Below are positions 2,292-15,139 of a stretch of 15,999 nucleotides of DNA, in pieces. The notes under the pieces were generated by a model. The model had not been told where the DNA came from. It ran no database searches and worked only from the letters and a program-made list of their open reading frames with translations. Position 1 is the stretch's first letter. Each line of letters opens with the position of its first letter. The DNA lies in NCBI RefSeq assembly GCF_006345805.1, contig NW_021825330.1, positions 1-15,999 of the forward strand, in the 5' to 3' direction. A program made the translations under genes and the position numbers. This DNA comes from Octopus sinensis. Lineage: Eukaryota.

Positions 2292-2293
2292 TA

Positions 2294-3368
2294 CAGTGCT
2301 GGTAGAAAAAAACCGGTTTTGCAGTTACTAACTTTTTTTGGCAGATAGCATTTATTTTTTTTTACTGAATCGAACTCTTTGTAGTTGATTAGATTTATAT
2401 TTTTTTTATTTATAAAAAATTTCATTATCGTTTACAATTCGGATAATTTAAATTGTAGCGTGTGAATAAAAAACCGGTTCTCTTCGGAAGAGTATGTCAA
2501 CGCAAACCGTTGCTTTCGAAGAAAACATAATAAAAAGATGTGAATTGTCAAAAATTTTTATTCTGATGAACAATGATGCATGGAGGACTATTATTTTCTT
2601 TGATGATACATCTTTTCAGATTTTTCCTACTAAAAAAAGGCAATACTGTTATCAAAAAAAAGTTCATGTTATGAATTGAGTCATATAACGCCGACAGTAA
2701 AATTTGGTGGAGGTAGCGTTATAGTTTGGGGCTGTATTTCCTATCAAGGAGTGGGCGATTTAGTTTTTGTTAATGGAACACTCAATTCCGCTAAATATAT
2801 AAATGCAATAACGAATAATTTGTTTGTTTCGACGCGAAAAATGGGACTAAATCAGTTCACTTTCCAACAAGATTTGGCTCCCTGCCATCATCTGCATTGA
2901 CAACCAAGTTTTTAAGAAATAAATTCCAATTCTTGATTGGGCTCCGCAATCTCCAGACATGAACCCAATGGAACATGTTTGGAGCATGATGAAGCAGAAG
3001 TATTCTTTAGATCCTGCAAAAAATAAACTGGATCTGGAAGTCAAATTAACAAAAATTTGGAACGAATTGCCGTCTGAAAGTATTCAGAGTTAATGATAGC
3101 ATGCCTAAAAGGTCATAAGAGCTATTTATAATCGAGATACCACACAACATATTAACTGTTGATTTTGTTAACTCTTTTTGTTTAAAACCGGTTTTTTATT
3201 CACATGCAAAAATTTAAATTTTTAAAATTTCGGCCGATTTTGAAATTTTTTAAAAGAAAAAAGATTAATATATAATCAACTTCAAACTCTTTATTTCATT
3301 TAAAATTAATAGCTATCCGCCAAAAAAAGTTAGTAACTGCAAAACCGGTTTTTTTTCTACCAGCACTG
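2294..3368 (+). mobile_element. Tc1 element 2, internally deleted, 1,075 bp, inserted into hAT 1
   Basis: 56/57-bp TIRs CAGTGCTGGTAGAAAAAAACCGGTTTTGCAGTTACTAAC... (2294-2349, 3312-3368). TA at 2292-2293 and 3369-3370. Inner DRs near 2459-2478 and 3186-3207. Motifs IIFFDDTSF, TVKFGGGSVIVWGCISY, FQQDLAPCH, WAPQSPDMNPMEHVW. The hAT text on both sides joins as ...VTR|IKDLVP. Confidence 0.95.
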
Positions 3369-3370
3369 TA

Positions 3371-4147
3371 CGAGTAACAGTCCAGATTGATGACCAATCA
3401 TCGCAGGTGCACCATCATACATATAGATCCACTTTAATCCCATTGGATTTTATTCGTCTTCATAAATTGTCAAAATATTAAAGATGTCCTCTCCACGAGT
3501 GTGTCCATCCATCTCCAAACAAAATAAAAACTCATCAATAATATTCTCATCATCAACAAAGCGAACATAGGACACCAGCTGACAGACGTTAGAATGTCAG
3601 TTGACTCGTCCAATTGAATACTTATTCTTCATTTACTTTTATTGATTCTTTCAATTAATTGCTTCAGGATATTAGATGACAATTCTGAAATTCTACGGGA
3701 AATTGAATCGTTGGATAATGGTATGTCCTTTAAGTTTGGTAACTGCATCCGGACCAACAAAATCGAGCCATTTCAAGAGCCGCTGTTTTATTAACTTTTC
3801 ACCAGAATTATGTACAGCTTTGTTTTTTTTGCGATAATCATTGAGACCTATTTGTTTTTGATATAAATTAAAATTACAGCATATGATGCTTCTAATCTCG
3901 GTTTATCTGAGATTTATTAAACCACTCAAGCTTTGGCTGTGAATCAAACTTCGTTCTTTTGACTTTAAATATTCATGTGAGGAAGAATTTTTCTCTGGGT
4001 GTACAGACTCTTTGTGGCGCCTAAGTTGAGAAGGTTTTCAGTGAATTGTTTTCCCAAAATTCTATGGCAAATCATGCATTTTGCCTTTATTTCATTATTT
4101 GAGGCAATGAATTTAGTGAATCCAAACGTTGTTAGAATATTTTTCAT
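3371..4147 (-). pseudogene. Buster/ZBED-type hAT transposase 1, upstream part
   Basis: FGFT...KAKCMICHRIL (BED-like, ORF 3965-4147), LEASYA|VSMIIAKK, DIPLSNDSISRRISEL, SIQLDESTD, QLVSYVRFVD, FLFCLEM, DGAPAMIGHQSG. Confidence 0.88.
3848..3877 (-). other. 30-nt GT-AG intron in hAT transposase 1
   Basis: GTAATTTTAATTTATATCAAAAACAAATAG ends in an in-frame TAG. Removing it gives ASYA|VSMIIAKK, matching VSYAVSELVAK in the hAT at 11539-13716. Confidence 0.75.
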
Positions 4148-4427: not shown

Positions 4428-4523
4428 TGCTCATAATCCTCCTGTGTAATAAGTACAGCCAAATTGACAAAATGCACGTTCGTTGTGTTGGAAAGCATCA
4501 ATTGACTTGAAAAATGATTTCAG
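4428..4523 (-). repeat. 96-bp inverted copy of SKI3-like coding sequence 7372-7470
   Basis: Reverse complement CTGAAATCATTTTTCAAGTCAATTGATGCTTTCCAACACAACGAACGTGCATTTTGTCAATTTGGCTGTACTTATTACACAGGAGGATTATGAGCA aligns with 7372-7470 apart from a few indels and substitutions. Confidence 0.93.
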
Positions 4524-4545
4524 TAAGGAGGAATAATAAACAATA

Positions 4546-5930
4546 CAGTCCGACCCCCAAATGGGGCACCAAGTGCCCCAAATGCGGGGGTGCCCCAAAA
4601 CAGGGGTTTGTTATTTTTTTAAAAATTAAACCATTAATAAACATCAAAAAACATTTTTATTACTAAAATATTCAGTTATTTTCTTATTTGTAGAGTTTTG
4701 TCTGATATTGTTTCGTCAATTTCAGCCGAAAATCAAAAAAATCTCGGAGCATACTTGGTGCAACATTAGAAATTTTTTTCTTCTAAATTGTTAAGCGTCT
4801 TTTGTTTGTTTTTTTTGTTTTTGCTACGACATTTTCACTATTTTTCGGTTTCTGAATATGTATCATAAACATTATTGTTCATTCTTCGCATTCTCCATCA
4901 ATTGTTTTCGTTAACAACTTGATCTAAATGTTCATCTGTTAGACATTTTTTGTTGCATAAGAATCACGGTTCCTGTCGATTTTCTTCCACCAATTAACAA
5001 TACTTTTAGCATCTATTTTCTCCCATCCTTTTGAAATTAGCATCATAACCTGACGCAAATTTATTTACCAATAGAATGTGTAAAATCGTTTTCGAAATCT
5101 TGAAACATAAAATTCCATTAAGAAAGAGGAATAATAATCTTTAAAATCTTGATTATTCCCATATCCAAAGTTTGTAAATAGGGCGTTGTATTTTTCGGCA
5201 AAATAAAAATTCGATGTTCGAACATTCGGCAGTTTATGGCATCCCGCATTGTCAAGTATTAATAATATTTTTCTGTTGTTTTTGCAAAACGATTCATTTA
5301 TAATGTAAGCCACTCATAAAAGCTTTCCAGTCATCCATGCATTTTGAGAAGATGAATACAATAACCCAAAATCTTGAACATCAAAATTTTTTAGACACCG
5401 AGGTTTTTTATATTTTCCAATAATCATGGAAGGCCTGAAATCGGAATTTTATCTACGCGTAGTCTTTGAAATATTTCAAAGACTTGATCATCAATTTATC
5501 TTTATCGGCTTTAAATGTGTCATATTCCTCAGAAATAGTATTGCCGTGTTGCAAGAAAGGTACAATATTTCGTTTTTATTCTTGATATTGTTCCTTTACT
5601 TGTGTTGTACTTTTTTCATTAGTTTTGCCTCTCAGATAAATTTTTCTTCAAAATTTCTTTAGCAATCTTCATTTAGTTTCGTAATCCATACCACAACAAT
5701 AAAAATATAAATTGAAAATAAAACAAAAATAATTAATTTATTATAATTTTATTTTATTTTTAATTCCTATAAATGATTTTATGGTGCCCCAAAAATTCCA
5801 TAATTTTTTATCGATTTTTATTTTTTTTCTGCCAAAATGTACTTTGGAATAAAGTGCCCCAAATTGCGGGGTGCCCCAAAATCCGAGGGTGCCCCACCCC
5901 TGGGGTCTGCCCCATTTTGGGGTCGGACTG
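4546..5930 (-). mobile_element. pogo/Tigger-family DNA transposon, 1,385 bp, degenerate DDE_1 transposase
   Basis: TIRs CAGTCCGACCCC(C/A)AAATGGGGCA. TA at 4544-4545 and 5931-5932. Minus-strand motifs IIGKYKKPRCLKNF, YSSSQNAWMTGKL, RKILLILDNAGCH. GTGCCCCAAA subterminal repeats. Confidence 0.93.
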
Positions 5931-6243
5931 TAGCCCCTAATTATTTTGCATCAAAGTAATGCAATTCAGGGCTTCTCTCTAGGTTTTCAGGTTGTCTGCT
6001 ATTATTAGAAACTCTCTCAATGTAATTTCGGAAAAGCAGATTCTTAAAATTTTTACAAAATTGTCAGATTTGTTAAACAAGTAGTTTTTATGCCAAAATT
6101 TATTTTTATTAATCAAAATATTGGAAAATCTATTTAATTATTTTTTTAACATATTTATGGTTATATTTTCATAACATATTATCCTAAATAAAATAAAATA
6201 AATACGAAAGAGCTGGCTACAAACCTGGATTCTGAAACATTGA

Positions 6244-8696
6244 TTTAAAAATGCCGAAATGTACACAACCCGTGCCTACTCACACTGCTACAACACAACT
6301 GAAGGACTCTATTCTGCTTTTTTTCCTGTTTTTTTAGAAGCAGTCAAATTAGTTCCAAAGAAGCTCAATTTTCTTAAAATTTGAGATTTTTTCCAATATT
6401 TCATGAACGATTCAACCGTGCTTATTCTTGCTATGAAAGAGCCTACACTCGATTCCTTAGTACCAGAAATTGCCATTGCCTACCACGGAAGTAGCTTCGG
6501 TCTACTAAACAAAGATTCAAGTCAAAAATACCTTCAAAATTTCATTCGAAGTGATCTTTCTCCAGCAATGATCCCCGCACACTCCGCAGACTGGCAATAT
6601 TTTACATGTGCATGGATGAATACTCCAATCTCTGCGGATTTGTGACCTAGCAATTGACATTGACAAAGATTGTTTTCATTTTTGTAATGTTGAGGAACAG
6701 AACTGATTCGACTCAGTGGAATGAGTCTGACTTTTAACCACAAATCTTTTCTCGAAAAGTCTCAAGACATGCCCCAATGGAGGCTTTTAGTTAAACTGAT
6801 TATTACAATCTCTTCCCTCAAAAGCGGGACTTTGAAGAGATCGCCTCAACCCTCGAAGAATTGCTGAATTCAACCAACGAAGAATCGGAAGATTTGACGA
6901 TTTTTAAAGTCCTTTATGCTGAAGTTATGTGCTATTTTGGAGACGATTTGTTATCAAAAATCGTTTTTGGAAGCTTTTACATTTATACAATTGCTTTCGA
7001 AGTCTCTCCGTTTGTTTTTTATCCCAGGAAAGCAGAGATCAGAAAATAGTTCTGTTTTTATTTGGTTATTCTGCCTTTCGTCTTTCCAGCTATGTTTCCA
7101 CCCCGATTCTCCTCCTGGCCATGAAACTCTTCAGACATACGTCAAGTTGAGTATTTGGGCCTTTGGTCATTTGGCCATTATGACCAGGCTGTGTTCTGCG
7201 TTTTTATAACTGTGCTTTGGCTGCCTCATTTCTTTGGAGAATTAATGGAAATGAGAGTGCCCGTGATTTGTCCGTGGGGTGTGCAGTCTCCTCTGTTTGT
7301 GAGAGTGGTGGGAGTTCTGATCGTGGCTTCTTTTGGGGACTGTTGCTTACTTTTCAAGGATTACGTTCTCGCTGAAAAATCATTTTTCAAGTCATTGATG
7401 CTTCTCAACACAACGAACGTGCATTTGTCAATTTGGCTGTACTTTATTACACATGTGAGGATTATGAGCACTCCTTTCGTGTCATTGAAATGTCCAAGAA
7501 TGTTTCATTTTCTCGGGATAGTGAAATTATGTTAAAATTCTTCTAATGAAAGCGGGCACTTCAGATCATTGGGAATTTTTGATGGAATTGACAAGCATTG
7601 ATGGTAGCTATTAATGGCTTCAATCCATCAATTTTACCTATCGATTTTTTGCTGTGCACGTGCGACAAATTTGTGTTCGATATCCTGTTTTCAGAATGGA
7701 AAAAAAAATATTCCGTCTTGTATATCACTAAGGATTTATCTCCAGAGGATCAAGTCACCAAGGCCATTGAAGGTCTTTTTTATTATTTGGAGGCTCGACC
7801 CAACGATGCAATGGCTCAGTCTCTACTTGGGTCGTTCATGAATTTATTGGATTTCAAAACATCAGATGATCGGCATAAAATGGCTTTACAGCTCATCTCA
7901 GAAAAAAACGACGTATTTTCTCTCCGCCCCGAACAACTATCCAGCCTTGATTGTGAGGTTATATTTAACGCAATGAGAAGCCTTGTCGATTTGAGAATGA
8001 CTGGAGAATATATTTCTTCTTTGGTCTCATATCCGGGCACTAATCAATGCGAATTATTAAACGGATTTATTGGCTTGTACAACATTGGGGAGTACACTTC
8101 TGCACTGAATATATTAAATTTACTTCACCGTGATCCTTTCAGTTTTCGACTGCATGGAATTACTATTTTTAAATGTGGGAGACCAAATGATGCCCTTGAC
8201 TATTTGCTGAAGGTCAAATGTCCAGAATTAGTTTATGATATTTTCTATTTGTCCTTTCCTACTGAAAAATCAAGACTCTGCATATCAGGCATTCAAAATC
8301 ATTTTTGCCAAAAAGTCTTGAAGCTCTGTTTGTGAAGAGTTTATGGAAGTTCATGTCAGGAGACAGGTCCCCCATTTGTAATCTGGGTAATATACAACTT
8401 CGTTCTTTTTATAAAATGGGGAAGAATGATTTTATTCAGTATTATCTGGCACTATTATTATCCAATGAAGTGAGAATTGCAGACCTACCCATTTTTCGAC
8501 GTATGGTTGGTCAGTGTGAAAATCCACCGATGTGCTAGCCTCCACAGCTCTTGCAAGCTTTTCAGAAACATTATTACTTGTCTCCGCCTTAGTTCTTATT
8601 TTTATCGTTACTGAAATTTTTCTTTGTTTTATTATATATGGCTTCTTTTTTAATAAAGGCGTATTTATTACGATAATAAATACGCAATACAATTAG
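6244..8696 (+). CDS. SKI3: TPR-repeat protein resembling the central part of SKI3/TTC37 (SKI complex subunit); about 18-20 apparent 1-2 nt deletions; start and end approximate
   Basis: Frame-corrected segments match TTC37 motifs as I recall them, in order: FNRAYSCYERAY (KNRARGCYRKAF); LRRLAIFY (LRRGLYY); WLLLGTVAYFFKDYVLAEKSFFKSI (WNALGVVA...NYALAQHCFIKSI); NERAFVNLAVLYY (NAVAWTNLGVLYL); YYLEARPNDAMAQSLLG (KYVERIQNYAPAFTMLG); MTGEYISS (STGEYDKA). Longest clean ORF is 7598-8335 (245 aa). Orthology not verified by search. Confidence 0.65.
8659..8685. other. Perfect 12-bp hairpin with 3-nt loop
   Basis: GCGTATTTATTA-CGA-TAATAAATACGC. Confidence 0.9.
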
Positions 8697-8700
8697 CTAA

Positions 8701-8985
8701 TTAATTGTAATTTACTATAAGTTAATAAAGTCATCCATCCGAAGTGGACCCCGCCAACATAATTGACGTTGCGTTGCCTCTCACGATAGCAACGGAGATC
8801 AACTGGAGAAGCCACCGGGTCTCACTTGTGTCGTGGCTTTTTAATGTGACTAAGCGTCCAAGGTTCTTTAGGAAGTGAAGCGATTTCCCACTTATTCCTC
8901 CAGTTGTCTCGACCACAATCGGAACACGAATCGGTCTCGCAGCGCTTCATATTTTCTCTTCTTTGGCCTCAGCTAAACTTTAGCT
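8701..8985 (-). mobile_element. 5'-truncated CRE-clade-like non-LTR retrotransposon 3' end (C-terminus of the restriction-like endonuclease domain plus AT-rich tail)
   Basis: AEAK..KRKYEALRDRFVF.PIVVETTGGISGKSLHFLKNLGRL...WLLQLISVAIVRGNATSIM fits the K..KY...F.P..VET.G......FL..LG......QRISIAIQRGNA..I pattern of CRE-like elements. Confidence 0.7.
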
Positions 8986-9124
8986 GTGCAAAAAGATTAT
9001 TGAAAAATTATAAAAAGAAAAGTTACGAAGATTATCATTATAAATTAAAAAAAAGTCTAAAATTAAAAACAGAATATCAAAAAAATTAAGCATTCGAAAA
9101 TCCGGTTTTTTATTACATGGAGTG
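8986..9124 (+). repeat. Outer part of the right arm of Tc1 element 1
   Basis: Ends CATTCGAAAATCCGGTTTTTTATTACATGGAGTG|TA, inverse of 689-716. AT-rich spacer; no inner DR in this segment. Confidence 0.8.
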
Positions 9125-9126
9125 TA

Positions 9127-9604
9127 TATAATGCCGGAAATTGGGAACTTTCCGCTACAGACAATGACAACCTAGACTCTTTCCATAGAGATCATCTCCG
9201 ACGTACACTACCCTCAAAGTGGCATTCAAGGCTGAGTAGCAGAACAGTTTATCCCAGAACATCAAGCAAACCAATCTCGCTCGAAATTACCCAATGCAGA
9301 TGGAGGCTGTTTGGACACATTCTAATGATGGATTTGGATGCACCGGAAACGCCGCTAAGGAGGACTATTTCGAAGCTGGGGGCCATCGTTTTCGTGGGCG
9401 ACCAAGAAATACTCTCCTGGGTACGCTGGATAGAGACCTAAAGAGGGCTGGTAAAGAATTGAAGAACGGGGACGATCTCGATGCACTACGGGACGTCGCC
9501 CAAGATCGCGGGAAATGGAATAAACTAATTACTCGTATTGTTTCCTGTGCTGCACAAGCTTTGTCATGATCCATGGCATCGCGAAAGTGCCTATAATGAT
9601 AATG
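9127..9604 (+). mobile_element. 3' continuation of the LINE from 1-688
   Basis: YNAGNWELSATDNDNLDSFHRDHLRR, RWRLFGHIL, FRGRPRNTLLGTLDRDL, LRDVAQDRGKW, stop at 9567-9569, short TAATGATAATG tail at 9594-9604. Confidence 0.9.
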
Positions 9605-10071: not shown

Positions 10072-11538
10072 TTATCAAGTTAGTTAATTATTGACATCCT
10101 AGTATTAAATTAAGTACAATCTTTTCTGCATAAAAAATTGTTTGATGCCTGATACCGGAATAGGTTGCAATTTATTGTTAGTAAACTAACTCACCATATT
10201 TCTCTTCTATTACTAGTAATACCTCGTGAGATGGACTTGCATTTATTCTCACAAGTTTGTCAGTTAATAAGACACCCGTCGAATCTTTCTTTATCATCAT
10301 TTTAGTAATCCTTATATGAGAATATTTTAAGTATATATTGTGGGTTGAGACGCGTTATTAAATATGCACATTTTATTAAATCCATAAATACTACACAGTG
10401 AATATTTTAAAATACGAAATTTCTAGAATACGACTGATTTTGGGGGACTGAAAATGGAATTTTTTGGCATGTAACTTTAATGTTAAAATAAGATTTTTAC
10501 AGAGATTTTAAACTTTGTAGACTTGCCAAGGCATCTACATGCAGGAAACGAAGGGCACTACACGCATACAGATCTCATTATAATTAAAAATCATATTTTA
10601 TTGTGAATAACTCATTGGTTAGTATCGAACTTTATTTGTTAATATATATTACTTTACACTTAATTTTCAGTGATGATGAAAATAGGCAGTTGACTGGTTC
10701 ATTTGGAGACTTGCTGATTATCCTAATGCTAAGATTGCGGGTTTGAGGACACAAACCTATAGTCAAACGTTGAATTATCGGCTTGATTCTTGAATCCTGG
10801 TTCCATATTTAAAAATCCAAAAATACAGATTCGGAGTCACTAGTTACTATTTGATAATTTGAAATAAATATTTAAGTTATAGTTTTGTAAATATGTCAAC
10901 ATTCATGTACTTATTTCAAAAGTTGCATACCCTAATACAACGGAGAATTGATTTGAGATACCAAAAGTTTATTTGGGACATTAATTATTGTGACCGGTCG
11001 AAAATGAGATACGGTTGAATACGAGCCGTTAAAAAAATCGATAGTCAATATACCGATAAAAAAAAGCCAATTAACAAAATGGCACACGGCGCGTACTAAT
11101 GATTGAACCTTTAATCTTTTAAAAAATGAAGTTTTATATCTAAACCAAGTTTGCTTTAAATTAGTCAAATTATTCACAACATTAGCAAATTATAATTTAC
11201 ATCATTTTAATTTTTGATAATATACATTTCATTGATAGGCGGAAAGTATGTATAAAAAGGAGAAGGAAAGAGGCCACGCAGCCCCCAATGAGAGACGCTG
11301 AAACAGCCATTGGGTCTTGCGAGTGTCCTTCATGTACACAGATCAGCGATCCGAGCCATCTGACAAAAGAATTGATTGAATTTTGATTAAACAGAAAAAA
11401 ATTGCTGAACAACTTTTCTTGATCATATTCGGAAATAATTTAAGAAGATCTTGTTCCTGTTATCACTTAAATAATCTTATTTAAATTAATTTGTGAAGAA
11501 AGCTTAGTACATAAACTAGTGTAAAGTTTGCTTTAAAC

Positions 11539-13716
11539 CAGTGTTTCTCAACCTTTTTTTCCCTGAGGCCCATTTTCAGGGTCATATAAAATCTCAGGCC
11601 CATTGCCTTTAATAAAACTTTGATTAACAAAAAAGTATTTTTATTAACATAAAAAATCTTATTAAAATGTCAATGACTACACTGCTCTTGATGTCTATCT
11701 ATCAATTTGTCAAGTTGAATTTCCAGATCTTGGTTCAACCTCAAACGTAAGTCTCCTCTCTTCTCAATCTGCAATTGATTGCGTTTTTTTGTGAGTAAAT
11801 CGTTTGTTGCAGAAAATCCTGTCTCAACCAACCAAGTGGTGGGAAAGCCAAGTACAAACGGAACAACTTTTTCAAAGAGTAATGGATGAATCGATTCTAC
11901 TTTCATCCATCCATATAAGCCATCCCTTTCAATATTTTTCATTAATACTTTGTTCTCCTTCAGTTCAAGAAGTTCTCCAGCAATAATAGGATCAATGTCT
12001 TTTTCACTTAATACGTCAAAATGTGCTATATCTATAATCCAACTAGGCGGATTCATTTCGATGATATCTTTAAATCTTCTAGTCATATCTTCTTTCAAGC
12101 ATTTCAAGTGGTCAGTGCAGCTTGCGATTACTTCTGAGCTCGGAGCAGTTTTGGCAAAATTACAAAAATAAGCAAATTCATTTTTTTGAAGATGCATCTT
12201 CCAGAGACATAACTTGTTCAAAAAAGAGCGTACTTTCTCAGCACTATCTATCAGATTAGCATTTCGCCCTTGCAGTGTCATGTTCAGTTGGTTGACATGT
12301 GCGAATAAGTCAGCCAGGTAAAAAATCCTTGCTTTTGTATCGTTGTTATTTATCACTGAAAACAAAGTCTCAGCTTTATCTTTCTGCTTCTTGCTACAAG
12401 CTTGTTTTTCATGTCATGAACAAAAATAAGAACCATATCCCACATTTCAGCAAGACGAACTAGGGAATTTCCTTTGGAAAGCCATCTCACTTCAGTGTGC
12501 ATGAGGAGTCTCTGGTGGTCCTCATGTTCACATAAATGTTGAAATAGGCGGTCATGCAAAGCATTGGCTTTGACAAAATTCACTGTTGAAACAGCGACTT
12601 TCAATGCATGTTCCATGTCATCATTGAGAGATTTAGCACAAAGATGTTCTCGATGGATGATGCAATGAATTGCCAATATATGAGGGGCAACTTTTTTTAA
12701 TTTAGCTACAAAGCCATTCTGTTTGCCGGTCATAGCGCTGGCACCGTCTGTTGCAATCTGCAACAGATTTGACAGAGGGATCCCATTATCGTACAGATAG
12801 TCGTAAACAGCCGCATATATAGTGTCGCTTCGTGTGTCAATCAACTTTTTTATAATAACATTTCTTCATGAATTGCCATTGCATCAATATATCGGACATA
12901 AGTAAGTAATAAGGCAGAATTGTTGATTGTTGTCTCATCAATTTGTAGTGAGAACTTAGAAACTTTTAATTTTTCCACAAGCTGTTTCTCGAGGTTTTCT
13001 GCCATTTCAATTTGCCTTCTCTTCACTGTGTCATTAGACAATGGGATTTTTTGTAGAATGTTGGCAGCCTGTTCTCCTAGCAGTTCTTTAGCACAGATCA
13101 ACATTGCTGGCTTCACCAGACGTTCTGCAATTGTATGTGGCTTCCCCACCTTAGCAACCAGTTCACTCACTGCATAACTGACTTTTAGTGTCTTGTTATT
13201 ATGCTCATTTGCTTTTTTTAAGCAGAATTCTAAAGTTTTTGGAGCATTCTTTTGGCGTAACTCCACTTTCTTCCTGAAATAGCTGCGCTCCTTTCCAACA
13301 GAAGCAGGATGCTTCAACTGTTGATGGGCGAACAATTTTGATTTCTTCATGGAAACATTTGTCATTACTAAGCCACAGTCCACACATTCAGGCCTCTTAG
13401 AATCAGCACTTGATGGGATGAAGCCTAGTAATAAAAAATCAGTCTGGTATTTGCGTGTAGTCTTCCTTTTTTCCTTGTGTACTTTTGACATGAACTATAC
13501 AATCAGGCCTATAATATTTAAATTTAAATATGACAATATCATTAAATTAAAAACAAATCAAATCAATTTGAAAATAATAACGAATAAAGATTTATTAGTA
13601 TTAGTATTAACATATTTTCTTTGAGGCCCACTCCAGGCCCAATTAAATCTTCAGGCCCATTTCAAAATTTCTCAGGCCCACAAGTGGGCCTGGGGCCCAA
13701 CGTTGAGAAACACCTG
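11539..13716 (-). mobile_element. Buster-type hAT transposon 2, 2,178 bp, nested in the Ginger element
   Basis: TIRs CAG(G)TGTTTCTCAAC. 8-bp TSD CTTTAAAC (11531-11538, 13717-13724) with central TA. AGGCCCA subterminal repeats near both ends. Confidence 0.96.
11670..13491 (-). CDS. hAT (Buster/ZBED5-like) transposase, ~607 aa after two single-base corrections
   Basis: Three consecutive ORFs (213, 163, 231 aa) with CVDC...HQQLKH, QIDETT, TDGASAM, HCIIH, EVRWLS and LVETGFS. Adding one T near 12855 (EEMLFIKKL) and one A near 12391 (VAKKQKDK) joins them. Confidence 0.9.
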
Positions 13717-13916
13717 CTTTAAACTAGTCAATTATTCCCTACAAATCATTTTTATTTTTGAAAAGATAAATTTTATTGAATTAAATTTCGATTAAGCTAT
13801 TCTACCTCGCTAAGTCCTCTCTGCTATTTTTCTGAATCACAGTACCATCTTCTGCTTCGGATCAACATTCCTGTGCAGATACTCCTCTAACATAATATGT
13901 GAATGTATCAATGTGC

Positions 13917-14889
13917 TCATTTAGGCACTTTCCGTGTTTTTTTATTATTGTCAAGATACACCCTCCTGACAACTCGATCGCCGATGTTAAAAATGGAAAT
14001 ATCATTCTTCCAGGTTCTTTTTCCTAACATTTTTCTTTCGGCATGGTCTGAATTCGAAATTGCTTTCGTTCTCGTGGTTTCATTCGATGACAAAAACCAT
14101 GCAAGATATTCAGTTGCTTCACTTTGTGTTTCTTTATTCCCCGAATCAATTTGGTGGAATATTTCATTCATTTCGTTTTCTGAGTAGTGATTATTAACGG
14201 TGTCATCGGCAGAATCGAACTTTTTTTCGTTTACGAATTCCTTGCCATTGTCTGTGTGCAAAATGGTTGGTTTTCCAAACATCAGAATTATACTTTTTAT
14301 TGCACTTGACACCTCCATGGCCGATTTAGTCTTTAGAGGTCTTGTCCAACAAAATTTAGAAAAAGAATCCAACCCAACCAAAAGCCAGCAAAAATTGTCA
14401 TTGGCATTTGAATAATGCCGTAGATCAACTAAATCAAAAATATATCTGATATTAGAGTAGATAACTACTACCTTTCTCTGACTATATATGCTCTGATAGG
14501 TGTTATACTTGGTCGAGTGTTCATAAGTCGTCTTGCAAGACATTGTGGACAAGACCTGAGAACAAGCATAACTTCATCTCTGCAAGATCCATAGACTAAT
14601 TCTTTAAAAGAGAAAGAAGTCTATCACGACCAGGATGTCCATTTTTGAGGTGAACATTTTTAATAAATATCCTCTGCTGTTCATCCTCTTCCACAGCGAA
14701 CACATGCAAAAGAATTCCACTTGTTTTGAAAAAAAATAATTGATCCGGCGAGGAGTCTATTAATCTGAATAAGGATGTAGTTCTTATAAAATTTCGCTTC
14801 TCCTTTAGCAAATTGGATGGTATAATTTGATATTTCAGATAGGTTATAATTCCTGGCTTTTGTAGCAGACTGAAACGGACAACCTTCAT
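13917..14889 (-). CDS. Ginger-type integrase/transposase (HHCC plus partial rve core), with an intron and an internal deletion
   Basis: HLKNGHPGRDR...SCPQC (HHCC), RERYIFDLVD after splicing (first D), GLDSFSKFCWTRPL, ILHTDNGKEF (second D). The G...QG.VER.N segment carrying the catalytic E is absent after ~14222. Confidence 0.85.
14446..14471 (-). other. 26-nt GT-AG intron in the Ginger integrase
   Basis: GTAGTAGTTATCTACTCTAATATCAG, with a CTAAT branch-like motif. Removal joins frames: ...PIRAYIVRE(AG|A)YIFDLVDLRHY. Confidence 0.8.
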
Positions 14890-15060
14890 AAAAAAAAAAC
14901 TAACGTGAGGAAAAATCTATTACTATTCTATCTGACGTAAACCGTTAAGAAAACAAAAATTTTGAAAAATTTAGAATTATTAAAATTACAAATCATTATA
15001 AAGGTATAAATTAATTTTGATTAATTTTTTCATTAAAAAAATATTGACGATTTTTTTAAC

Positions 15061-15135
15061 GGCTCGTATTCAACCTGGGCTCGTATTCAACCGGTCACAA
15101 TTGTGACCTGGGCTCGTATTCAACCGGTCACAATT
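15061..15135. repeat. Repeat cluster and palindrome at the Ginger right terminus
   Basis: GGCTCGTATTCAACC three times; 27-bp direct repeat at 15076-15102 and 15109-15135; palindrome GGTCACAATTGTGACC at 15093-15108. Confidence 0.9.
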
Positions 15136-15139
15136 ATTA

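What the first reader, a model, noticed from the sequence alone, without database searches (positions are those of the whole stretch)
6244..8696. Hidden SKI3/TTC37-like TPR gene inside the transposon-bounded block
Seen: the short ORFs from 6244 to 8696 link into one ~800-aa TPR-like protein when frames are shifted, and at least six motifs match human TTC37 in order as I recall it. Only the central part is represented; about 500 N-terminal residues are not found upstream, where AT-rich DNA starts near 6200. Established: SKI3 scaffolds the SKI2-3-8 complex that feeds cytoplasmic RNA to the exosome and restricts dsRNA viruses in yeast. Inference: this is either a reduced native ortholog of a parasite-like genome or a captured, 5'-truncated copy of an RNA-surveillance gene inside a mobile element, which could act as a dominant-negative or a small-RNA source.
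Basis: partly seen in the sequence, partly recalled or inferred. Interest (0 to 1): 0.72.

Follow-up and report, generated by a model that had tools for sequence, protein, structure and literature searches.

The report
Decayed SKI3/TTC37 pseudogene fragment among transposons
The region really is derived from the RNA-surveillance scaffold gene SKI3 (TTC37/SKIC3), but it is a truncated copy broken by frameshifts in a transposon-rich stretch, so it is most likely an ordinary dead pseudogene and not a working or weaponised gene.

Summary
On the + strand, about 6800-8600 is a former coding region. It can be read through with 9 frame changes and no stop, where control DNA of the same length needs about 20-25 lesions. 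It is specifically homologous to human SKIC3/TTC37. The core (7324-7504) matches SKIC3 residues 828-890 at 26/60 identities. It scores 86 in a frameshift-aware alignment, against 40 or less for any other SKIC3 repeat and 46 for consensus TPR. Weaker blocks match residues about 700-744, 972-1056 and 1297-1348 in the same order, and both flanks beat all 100 shuffles.

The copy is not intact. Two 1-nt deletions lie inside the best-conserved TPR, and further frame changes or stops lie at about 7544-7603, 8300 and 8500. About 83 residues are missing at 7322/7324. Nothing matches the N-terminal ~400 or C-terminal ~200 residues. The only long ORF is 247 codons (7592-8332).

A neighbouring hAT element differs from a marine-metagenome relative by 118 substitutions but only 2 indels, so assembly error does not explain the breaks. 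Two introns seen in other animals' SKI3 genes are absent, which weakly favours a retrocopy. The "Tc1-bounded cargo" idea rests on two inverted-repeat remnants 8.3 kb apart with several other transposon pieces between them, and it is untested. Interest is low.

The parts
6244..6812 (+). Membership of the SKI3-like copy is not supported.
   Evidence: Human SKIC3 1-395 against 5900-6812 scores 28, with a shuffle mean of 33. Sliding minimal-lesion cost is 6-7 on + and 7-8 on -, so there is no strand-specific coding signal. No Pfam hit.
6813..7122 (+). Weak upstream SKI3-like block in the expected order, broken by about 3 frame changes. It aligns to human residues ~396-501, or alternatively 598-611 at 6986-7027.
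   Evidence: Local score 52 against 39.1 +/- 4.0 (0/100 shuffles). The chained alignment picks 598-611 at 6986-7027. The whole upstream flank scores 83 against 56 +/- 8.3 (0/100), and the wrong half of the protein gives z = 0.7.
7196..7322 (+). Block matching human SKIC3 700-744 (LEYFTCAL...LWKLAGD...VHVLGVLL), with one frame change near 7265. Human residues 745-827 have no counterpart between 7322 and 7324.
   Evidence: Score 42 against 24.7 +/- 3.8 (1/300 shuffles). Human 745-827 and the matching exon of L005 score below the null mean.
7324..7504 (+). Core anchor: the TPR pair matching human SKIC3 828-890 at 26/60 identical. It is read in three frames (1 to 0 to 2) because of two 1-nt deletions at about 7358-7364 and 7396.
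   Evidence: Specificity is 86 against <=40 for the rest of SKIC3 and 46 for consensus TPR x8. PDB search gave E = 6e-4 with SKIC3 as best natural hit. tblastn linked HSPs gave E = 0.03. SKI3 exon fragments of two other animals hit the same place: 52 and 55 against 36-37 +/- 4.5, 0/200, and BLASTP E = 1e-6 and 2e-6.
7544..7603 (+). Damaged junction before the long ORF. It holds either four in-frame stops (TAA TGA at 7544-7549, TGA at 7577, TGA at 7589) or two more frame changes (about 7547 and 7603). No canonical GT-AG intron restores the frame.
   Evidence: The splice-site check was made by reading the sequence.
7592..8332 (+). The only long open stretch (247 codons). It is all-helical and weakly matches human SKIC3 ~899-1133 in the expected order. 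It starts at the QAL(I/M) motif that follows WIG in SKI3.
   Evidence: The best local alignment against the whole 1564-aa protein falls at 971-1133, score 51 against 38.7 +/- 4.8 (p about 0.03). It is chained to the anchor. No homolog was found in 5.8e9 or 1.84e9 proteins. The AF2 single-sequence model is helical with pLDDT 39.6.
8266..8573 (+). Downstream remnant. The frame drops 2 to 1 near 8300 and 1 to 0 near 8486-8520, with a stop at 8517. Positions 8434-8573 match human 1297-1348 weakly.
   Evidence: The downstream flank as a whole scores 80 against 58.2 +/- 6.8 (0/100), and the swapped control gives z = -0.5. Nothing matches beyond 8573.
4428..4520 (-). Inverted 96-bp duplicate of 7377-7470 (92% identical, with several 1-2-nt indels). 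It lies 23 nt from the left end of a pogo-like element. It keeps 'SFFKSIDAFQHNERAF' in one frame where the main copy has lost a base.
   Evidence: ORF 4431-4598; I4. The predicted duplex between the two arms is -135 kcal/mol against -24.6 +/- 3.9 for shuffles.
8991..9127 (-). Remnant of a Tc1-like inverted repeat (right end, outer transposase-binding motif only). Its partner is the left inverted repeat at 686-880.
   Evidence: (I5), 40, 59, 60: 27 nt at 96%, and 130 nt at 69% to the reverse complement of 690-808. The A-rich DNA at 9000-9095 belongs to this repeat and is not a poly(A) tail.

Best explanation
Positions ~6800-8600 (+) are a non-functional, truncated pseudogene copy of the host's SKI3 (TTC37/SKIC3) gene. 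It covers roughly the equivalent of human residues 400/600-1350. It lacks the N-terminal arm and the C-terminal end, has an internal loss of about 83 residues, and is broken by at least 6-9 small frame-destroying mutations. It most likely does nothing.

Its most likely origin is a LINE-mediated, 5'-truncated retrocopy of the mRNA that landed in a transposon-rich region. This origin is inferred, not shown. The 96-bp inverted patch at 4428-4520 is most simply filler DNA copied from the pseudogene during a local rearrangement or break repair next to the pogo-like element. That too is inference.

Shown: the homology, its specificity, the shared order of blocks, the lesions and the truncations. Inferred: that the lesions are real mutations, the retrocopy origin, and the lack of function.
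For: Homology and specificity.

Former coding region: cost 18 against 44-57; signal confined to ~6800-8600.

Broken frame inside the best-conserved TPR, with no spare sequence that could be an intron. The duplicate keeps the base that the main copy lost at 7396.

Assembly quality: the 1821-nt hAT coding region differs from a short-read marine-metagenome contig by 118 mismatches and only 2 one-nt gaps. An A9 run inside the 247-codon ORF is read in frame. Homopolymer miscalls are therefore an unlikely cause.

Truncation: no match to human 1-395 or 1349-1564 anywhere in the window.

Retrocopy: genomic contigs of two other animals have ~60-nt introns inside the CYSGIG loop and at WIG|QALIAE. The window is contiguous at both positions, and about 1.7 kb of coding sequence has no intron-sized interruption. 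LINE fragments lie nearby.
Against: No poly(A) tail and no convincing target-site duplication were found. The only flanking repeat is a 10-mer at 6197/8675, about what chance gives.

The parent gene of this organism is unknown, so the lack of introns could be native.

The first frameshift coincides with an intron position seen in other animals, and a retrocopy model does not predict that.

The 247-codon ORF is long for a dead gene. By my own rough estimate, not a tool result, the probability that some gap between lesions is this long is about 0.1.

Most blocks outside the anchor are weak on their own, and human SKIC3 was the only full-length comparator.

The 96-bp duplicate differs from the main copy mostly by indels (about 6 indels against 2 substitutions), which is odd for ordinary divergence.
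Confidence: 0.72

Rival explanations
1. It is an unprocessed pseudogene. Either it is the native SKI3 locus decaying in place (a unitary pseudogene in a lineage losing the SKI complex), or it is a DNA-level partial duplicate, in a genome whose SKI3 gene simply has few introns.
For: No poly(A) tail or target-site duplication. A second DNA-level fragment of the same sequence lies 2.9 kb away. One frameshift sits at an intron position known from other animals, as imprecise intron loss might leave. Transposon insertions could have separated the missing 5' part beyond the window edge.
Against: Two intron positions shared by two other animals are empty, and about 1.7 kb of coding sequence is uninterrupted. 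No N-terminal homology appears in the 6 kb upstream on either strand.
Confidence: 0.2
2. It is cargo of a composite Tc1-like element (transduplication). The fragment was captured between the inverted repeats at 686-880 and 8991-9127 and can move with them.
For: The two repeat ends share 26/27 bases of a subfamily-specific terminal motif and face each other. Both are flanked by TA.
Against: The right repeat lacks its inner binding motif, and the spacer is only 69% identical. The transposase remnant stops at 1753, and no remainder lies next to the right end. The 8.3-kb interior holds at least three other transposon pieces. No second copy was found in the collections available, though these do not contain the source genome. 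TA flanks are trivial in AT-rich DNA.
Confidence: 0.06
3. It is a working native SKI3 gene of reduced size. The apparent lesions would be assembly errors or unusual (tiny or non-canonical) introns.
For: There is a 247-codon ORF, a strong near-ORF signal over 1.8 kb, and 43% identity to human in the core. Several indel differences between the two 96-bp copies fall in short homopolymers.
Against: The two core frameshifts leave no room for introns, and no GT-AG solution exists at 7544-7603. The indel rate elsewhere in the window is low. The N-terminal and C-terminal parts and ~83 internal residues are missing. No predicted protein like it exists in 1.84e9 representatives, although that library is poor in eukaryotes.
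Confidence: 0.05
4. The similarity to SKI3 is a chance resemblance of generic TPR-like helices, and the region derives from some other TPR gene.
For: No Pfam model passes threshold. The unstitched 56-aa piece hits only designed consensus TPRs. Most blocks outside the core are individually weak.
Against: The core scores 86 against SKIC3 828-890, but <=40 against all other SKIC3 repeats and 46 against consensus TPR. Both flanks match only the correct half of SKIC3. The best local hit of the long ORF lands at the position expected from the block order.
Confidence: 0.02

Closest known systems
SKI3 / TTC37 / SKIC3, the TPR scaffold of the cytoplasmic SKI2-SKI3-SKI8 complex (human structures 7QDR, 9G8O)
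   Same: Specific sequence homology to the TPR pair at residues 828-890. Weaker similarity in the same order from ~700 (possibly ~400/600) to ~1350. All-helical repeat character.
   Different: Only about 600 of ~1564 codons are represented. The N-terminal arm and the C-terminal end are absent and ~83 internal residues are missing. The frame is broken repeatedly, so no SKI3-like protein can be made.
Processed (retrotransposed) pseudogenes made by LINE machinery
   Same: It has no introns where other animals have them. It is 5'-truncated, carries disabling mutations, and sits among LINE and other transposon debris.
   Different: No poly(A) tail or target-site duplication is recognisable. The parent gene and its intron map in this organism are unknown.
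Gene fragments captured by DNA transposons (transduplication, Pack-MULE-like elements)
   Same: A host gene fragment lies between two facing Tc1-like inverted-repeat ends.
   Different: The ends are 8.3 kb apart and one is incomplete. Several unrelated transposons lie inside, and there is no evidence of mobility or of further copies. Capture is not a known habit of Tc1/mariner elements (my own knowledge, not tested).
Hairpin-RNA / pseudogene-derived endo-siRNA loci (Drosophila hpRNAs, mouse oocyte pseudogene siRNAs)
   Same: An inverted duplicate of a gene fragment (96 bp, 92%) could pair with the main copy if both were on one transcript.
   Different: The arms are short, the loop is 2.9 kb and holds a transposon, and there are no expression or small-RNA data.

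Membership tests
SKI3/TTC37/SKIC3 (sequence descent) | Significant similarity that is specific to SKI3 and not generic to TPR repeats | tested here: met
   Score 102 against nulls of 44.5 +/- 4.6 and 56 +/- 5.6. The core scores 86 against <=40 for other SKIC3 repeats and 46 for consensus TPR. SKIC3 is the best natural PDB hit.
SKI3/TTC37/SKIC3 (sequence descent) | Several blocks matching in the same order along the protein | tested here: met
   Upstream flank 83 against 56 +/- 8.3 and downstream flank 80 against 58 +/- 6.8, both 0/100. Swapped halves give z = -0.5 and 0.7. Blocks are listed. Individual blocks are weak.
SKI3/TTC37/SKIC3 (functional protein) | One intact reading frame encoding the full scaffold, including the N-terminal arm and the C-terminal region | tested here: not met
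   The longest ORF is 247 codons. There are frameshifts at ~7364 and 7396 and further lesions. There is no match to human 1-395 or 1349-1564, and 745-827 is missing.
SKI3/TTC37/SKIC3 (functional protein) | Binds SKI2 and two SKI8 subunits and feeds RNA to the exosome | not testable with these tools
   No expression or interaction data. The structure model is unusable (pLDDT 39.6).
Processed pseudogene (retrocopy) | Absence of the parent gene's introns | tested here: inconclusive
   Two intron positions present in two other animals' SKI3 contigs are empty here. The parent gene of this organism is not available.
Processed pseudogene (retrocopy) | 3' poly(A) tract and flanking target-site duplication | tested here: not met
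   There is no poly(A). The A-rich 9000-9095 is a Tc1-like inverted repeat. The only direct repeat is a chance-level 10-mer at 6197/8675.
Processed pseudogene (retrocopy) | 5' truncation and disabling mutations | tested here: met
Transposon-captured gene fragment | The fragment lies between the two ends of one element | tested here: inconclusive
   Facing repeat ends lie at 686-880 and 8991-9127. The right end is incomplete, the interior is a nest of other elements, and the transposase remnant ends at 1753.
Transposon-captured gene fragment | The same composite is present at other genomic sites | not testable with these tools
   The source genome is not in the searchable collections. There were no hits in JGI metagenomes or GTDB contigs, and none of 10 window ORFs is in the protein collection.
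hpRNA / endo-siRNA locus | Inverted duplicate of a gene fragment able to form dsRNA | tested here: met
   96 bp at 92% identity. The duplex is -135 kcal/mol against -24.6 for shuffles.
hpRNA / endo-siRNA locus | Co-transcription of both arms and production of small RNAs | not testable with these tools
   No RNA data.

The most novel reading that the evidence does not exclude
The pseudogene and its 96-bp inverted duplicate are transcribed together, for example from a neighbouring transposon promoter. They would form a ~90-bp dsRNA whose siRNAs dampen the functional SKI3 mRNA. The effect would be a transposon-associated brake on cytoplasmic RNA surveillance, analogous to hairpin-RNA loci that target their parent genes.
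Probability: 0.03. Interest if true: 0.6.

Novelty: new member of a known kind. Interest (0 to 1): 0.15.

Why it matters
As a dead gene copy it matters little. Pseudogenes of housekeeping genes in transposon-rich DNA are routine. Its practical value is for annotation: this locus should not be called as the organism's SKI3 gene, and it should not be taken as evidence of a 'reduced' SKI complex. It would become interesting in three cases. The genome might have no intact SKI3, which would mean loss of the SKI complex in an animal-like lineage. The fragment might recur with the same Tc1-like ends, which would be gene capture by a Tc1/mariner element. Or the inverted duplicate might yield small RNAs against the parent gene.

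Tried and rejected
1. Protein-database searches with the 247-aa ORF gave nothing. The word-indexed search of 5.8e9 proteins and exhaustive HMMER over 1.84e9 representatives both returned zero hits. A 70-aa human SKIC3 fragment retrieved only two exon fragments, so these libraries hold few eukaryotic SKI3 proteins. No family profile could be built.

2. Pfam scans gave no hit above threshold on single ORFs, on all three frames with X at stops, or on the stitched chain.

3. Plain tblastn with human SKIC3 detects only the core (E = 0.03). Finding the weaker blocks needed my own frameshift-aware alignment.

4. The AlphaFold single-sequence model of the ORF had pLDDT 39.6. I did not run a fold search because the result would be meaningless.

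5. I looked for the source genome or extra copies in JGI metagenome contigs, GTDB contigs and by exact protein look-up. None was found.

6. I first read the A-rich DNA at 9000-9095 as a possible poly(A) tail and 8895-9029 as the SKI3 C-terminus. I rejected both: that DNA is part of a Tc1-like inverted repeat, and the match scores at the null mean.

7. I suspected an all-deletion (-1) cascade of frameshifts. The reference-free path gives 5 x -1 and 4 x +1, so there is no general bias.

8. I tried canonical GT-AG introns to rescue the frame at 7531-7595. None works (sequence).

9. A literature search for TTC37 pseudogenes found nothing relevant.
Full report
**Context.** The window is AT-rich (30-42% G+C) and looks eukaryotic. 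It is packed with transposon remains.
- A LINE reverse-transcriptase fragment lies at 112-369, and a LINE-type 3' coding tail at 9294-9569 (named from its sequence; no Pfam hit).
- There are two Tc1-like elements whose inverted repeats carry repeated AAAAAACCGG(A/T)TTTT motifs. One has its left end at 686-880 and transposase remnants up to 1753. The other is complete at 2292-3370.
- A probable hAT fragment lies at 3450-4147 (named by eye only; no Pfam hit).
- A pogo-like element with 25-nt terminal repeats lies at 4544-5932 (DDE_1 at E = 0.0018, below Pfam's cut-off).
- A nearly intact FAM200/ZBED5-type hAT transposase gene lies at 11654-13472 on the minus strand.
- A retroelement integrase lies at 13917-14549.

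The hAT gene is 93.4% identical in DNA to a Tara Oceans marine-metagenome contig. The source is therefore probably a marine planktonic animal or a close relative of one. This is an inference.

No single frame of 6244-8696 is open except for 247 codons at 7592-8332. The + strand can nevertheless be threaded with very few lesions. A reference-free dynamic programme charged 3 per stop and 2 per frame change. It crosses 6385-8693 at cost 18 (nine frame changes, no stop). Ten equal-length control stretches cost 27-57: nine cost 44-57 and the one carrying the hAT transposase costs 27. The region's own reverse complement costs 47. In 450-nt windows the strand-specific signal is clear only from about 6800 to 8600.

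**Is it SKI3/TTC37?**

Database routes failed. The 247-aa ORF has no homolog in 5.8e9 or 1.84e9 predicted proteins. Pfam gives nothing above threshold.

A hand-stitched chain searched against PDB sequences gave human SKIC3/TTC37 as the best natural hit. Chain residues 316-383 matched SKIC3 826-895 at E = 6e-4, and the next natural TPR protein had E >= 0.2.

To remove my own stitching from the test, I first obtained the human sequence in a tool-verified form. It is 100% identical to chain 7qdr_B over all 1564 residues. I then wrote a protein-against-DNA aligner that allows frame changes. Its best local alignment joins human 828-1133 to window 7324-8293 with score 102. The nulls were as follows:

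| Null | Score |
|---|---|
| 150 residue shuffles | 44.5 +/- 4.6, max 61 |
| 150 shuffles of 34-aa blocks | 56.2 +/- 5.6, max 79 |
| Reversed protein | 41 |
| Reverse-complemented DNA | 41 |
| Other parts of the window, either strand | 35-52 |

Most of the signal is the TPR pair at 7324-7504. It matches human 828-890 at 26 of 60 positions and scores 85 even after paying for two frame changes. That DNA scores 86 against this part of SKIC3, at most 40 against all the other repeats of SKIC3, and 46 against eight copies of the consensus TPR. The match is therefore specific, not generic TPR. Exon fragments of SKI3 from two other animals (P0001 and P0002) hit the same place.

**Do the blocks follow the order of SKIC3?**

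With the core excluded, I used a chaining version of the aligner. The upstream DNA matches the N-terminal side of SKIC3 (83 against 56.0 +/- 8.3, 0/100 shuffles). The downstream DNA matches the C-terminal side (80 against 58.2 +/- 6.8, 0/100). The swapped pairings are at the null (z = -0.5 and 0.7).

The individual blocks are:
- human 700-744 at 7196-7322 (42 against 24.7 +/- 3.8, 1/300);
- human 971-1133 inside the long ORF, which is the best local alignment against the whole protein and falls at the position expected from the block order (p about 0.03);
- human 1297-1348 at 8434-8573 (6/100);
- an ambiguous upstream block at 6813-7122.

Nothing matches human 1-395 or 1349-1564, and human 745-827 has no counterpart.

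**Is it a gene?** No, not as assembled.

In the core the ancestral reading runs through three frames:
- WLLLGTVAYFS in frame 1;
- (K)DYVLAEKSFFKS in frame 0;
- IDASQHNERAFVNLAVLYYT in frame 2.

There are two 1-nt losses only 32 nt apart. The alignment to human is gap-free apart from two residues, so there is no room for introns.

The second loss is absent from a 96-bp inverted duplicate of this very segment at 4428-4520 (92% identical). That copy reads SFFKSIDAFQHNERAF in one frame. The main copy therefore lost the base after the duplication.

Between 7544 and 7603 there are either four in-frame stops or two more frame changes, and no canonical GT-AG intron rescues the frame. The frame drops again near 8300 and near 8500.

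Assembly error is an unlikely cause. The 1821-nt hAT gene differs from its metagenome relative by 118 substitutions but only two 1-nt gaps. An A9 run inside the long ORF is in frame.

The 700 lesion-free bases of the long ORF are not very surprising given the spacing of the other lesions. My own rough estimate puts the probability at about 0.1.

**Origin.**

Genomic contigs carrying SKI3 exons of two other animals show ~60-nt introns at two positions: inside the loop before NYALAQ, and at WIG|QALIAE. The window is contiguous at both, and about 1.7 kb of coding sequence has no intron-sized gap.

Together with the missing 5' part and the LINE debris nearby, this favours a 5'-truncated retrocopy. 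However, there is no poly(A) tail. The A-rich DNA at 9000-9095 turned out to be part of a Tc1-like inverted repeat. The only flanking direct repeat is a chance-level 10-mer. A DNA-level duplicate, or the native locus decaying in an intron-poor genome, therefore remains a serious rival.

**The transposon-cargo idea.**

The two 'Tc1 ends' are real inverted-repeat remnants of one subfamily. They share 26 of 27 terminal bases, and 69% over 130 nt. But they lie 8.3 kb apart, and the right one lacks its inner binding motif. The transposase remnant stops at 1753, with no continuation near the right end. The interior contains at least three other transposon pieces. This looks like a nest of insertions, not a composite element. 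The decisive test is whether other copies exist in the genome, and I could not run it.

**The one mildly unusual feature.**

The 96-bp inverted duplicate lies 23 nt from the end of the pogo-like element. The duplicate and the main copy would form a near-perfect duplex if they were co-transcribed (-135 kcal/mol). I read the duplicate as filler DNA from break repair or a local rearrangement. A role as a small-RNA source cannot be excluded, but there is no positive evidence for it.

**Verdict.**

The sequence observation is confirmed in substance and trimmed to about 6800-8600. It is SKI3-derived, but it is a truncated, frame-broken pseudogene. This is a known kind of object and of low interest unless the genome-wide tests listed under next steps give unexpected answers.

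Noticed in passing
window 11532-13721 (-), coding part 11654-13472: A nearly intact FAM200/ZBED5-type hAT transposase (607 aa, conceptual translation) is broken only by two 1-nt frameshifts. It is 93.4% identical in DNA to a Tara Oceans marine-metagenome contig (L003) and 80% identical to two places on a 934-kb ENA contig (L001, L002). This points to a marine planktonic source and a recently active element family.
   Followed up: partly
window 4428-4520 (-) and 7377-7470 (+): A 96-bp inverted duplicate of the SKI3-like core abuts a pogo-like element. The two copies differ mostly by small indels (about 6) and less by substitutions (about 2), an unusual ratio. The arms could form a ~90-bp duplex.
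   Followed up: partly
window 4544-5932: A pogo/Tigger-like DNA transposon with 25-nt terminal inverted repeats (TACAGTCCGACCCCCAAATGGGGCA, 96%) and DDE_1 remnants on the minus strand. G/C-rich 'GGTGCCCCAAAA' subrepeats lie near both ends.
   Followed up: partly
window 10982-11040 and 15048-15139: A 54-nt inverted repeat pair (87%) lies 4 kb apart, and the right arm is tandemly doubled (15073-15102 / 15106-15135, 100%). The pair encloses both the hAT element and the integrase fragment, so it may mark the ends of a further, larger element.
   Followed up: no
window 2292-3370: A complete but internally deleted Tc1-like element with long inverted repeats of ~190 bp. Each repeat carries two copies of the AAAAAACCGGTTTT motif (IR/DR architecture), and the transposase is decayed.
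   Followed up: partly
window 8659-8685 and 6197-6206: An AT-rich palindrome (CGTATTTATT ACGAT AATAAATACG) sits just past the pseudogene. This is probably chance.
   Followed up: partly
L004 and L005 (Logan contigs SRR23946959, SRR28250313): Genomic contigs of two unidentified animals carry clear SKI3 exons (human residues 764-972) separated by ~60-nt introns. They are useful as an intron map for this part of the gene.
   Followed up: partly
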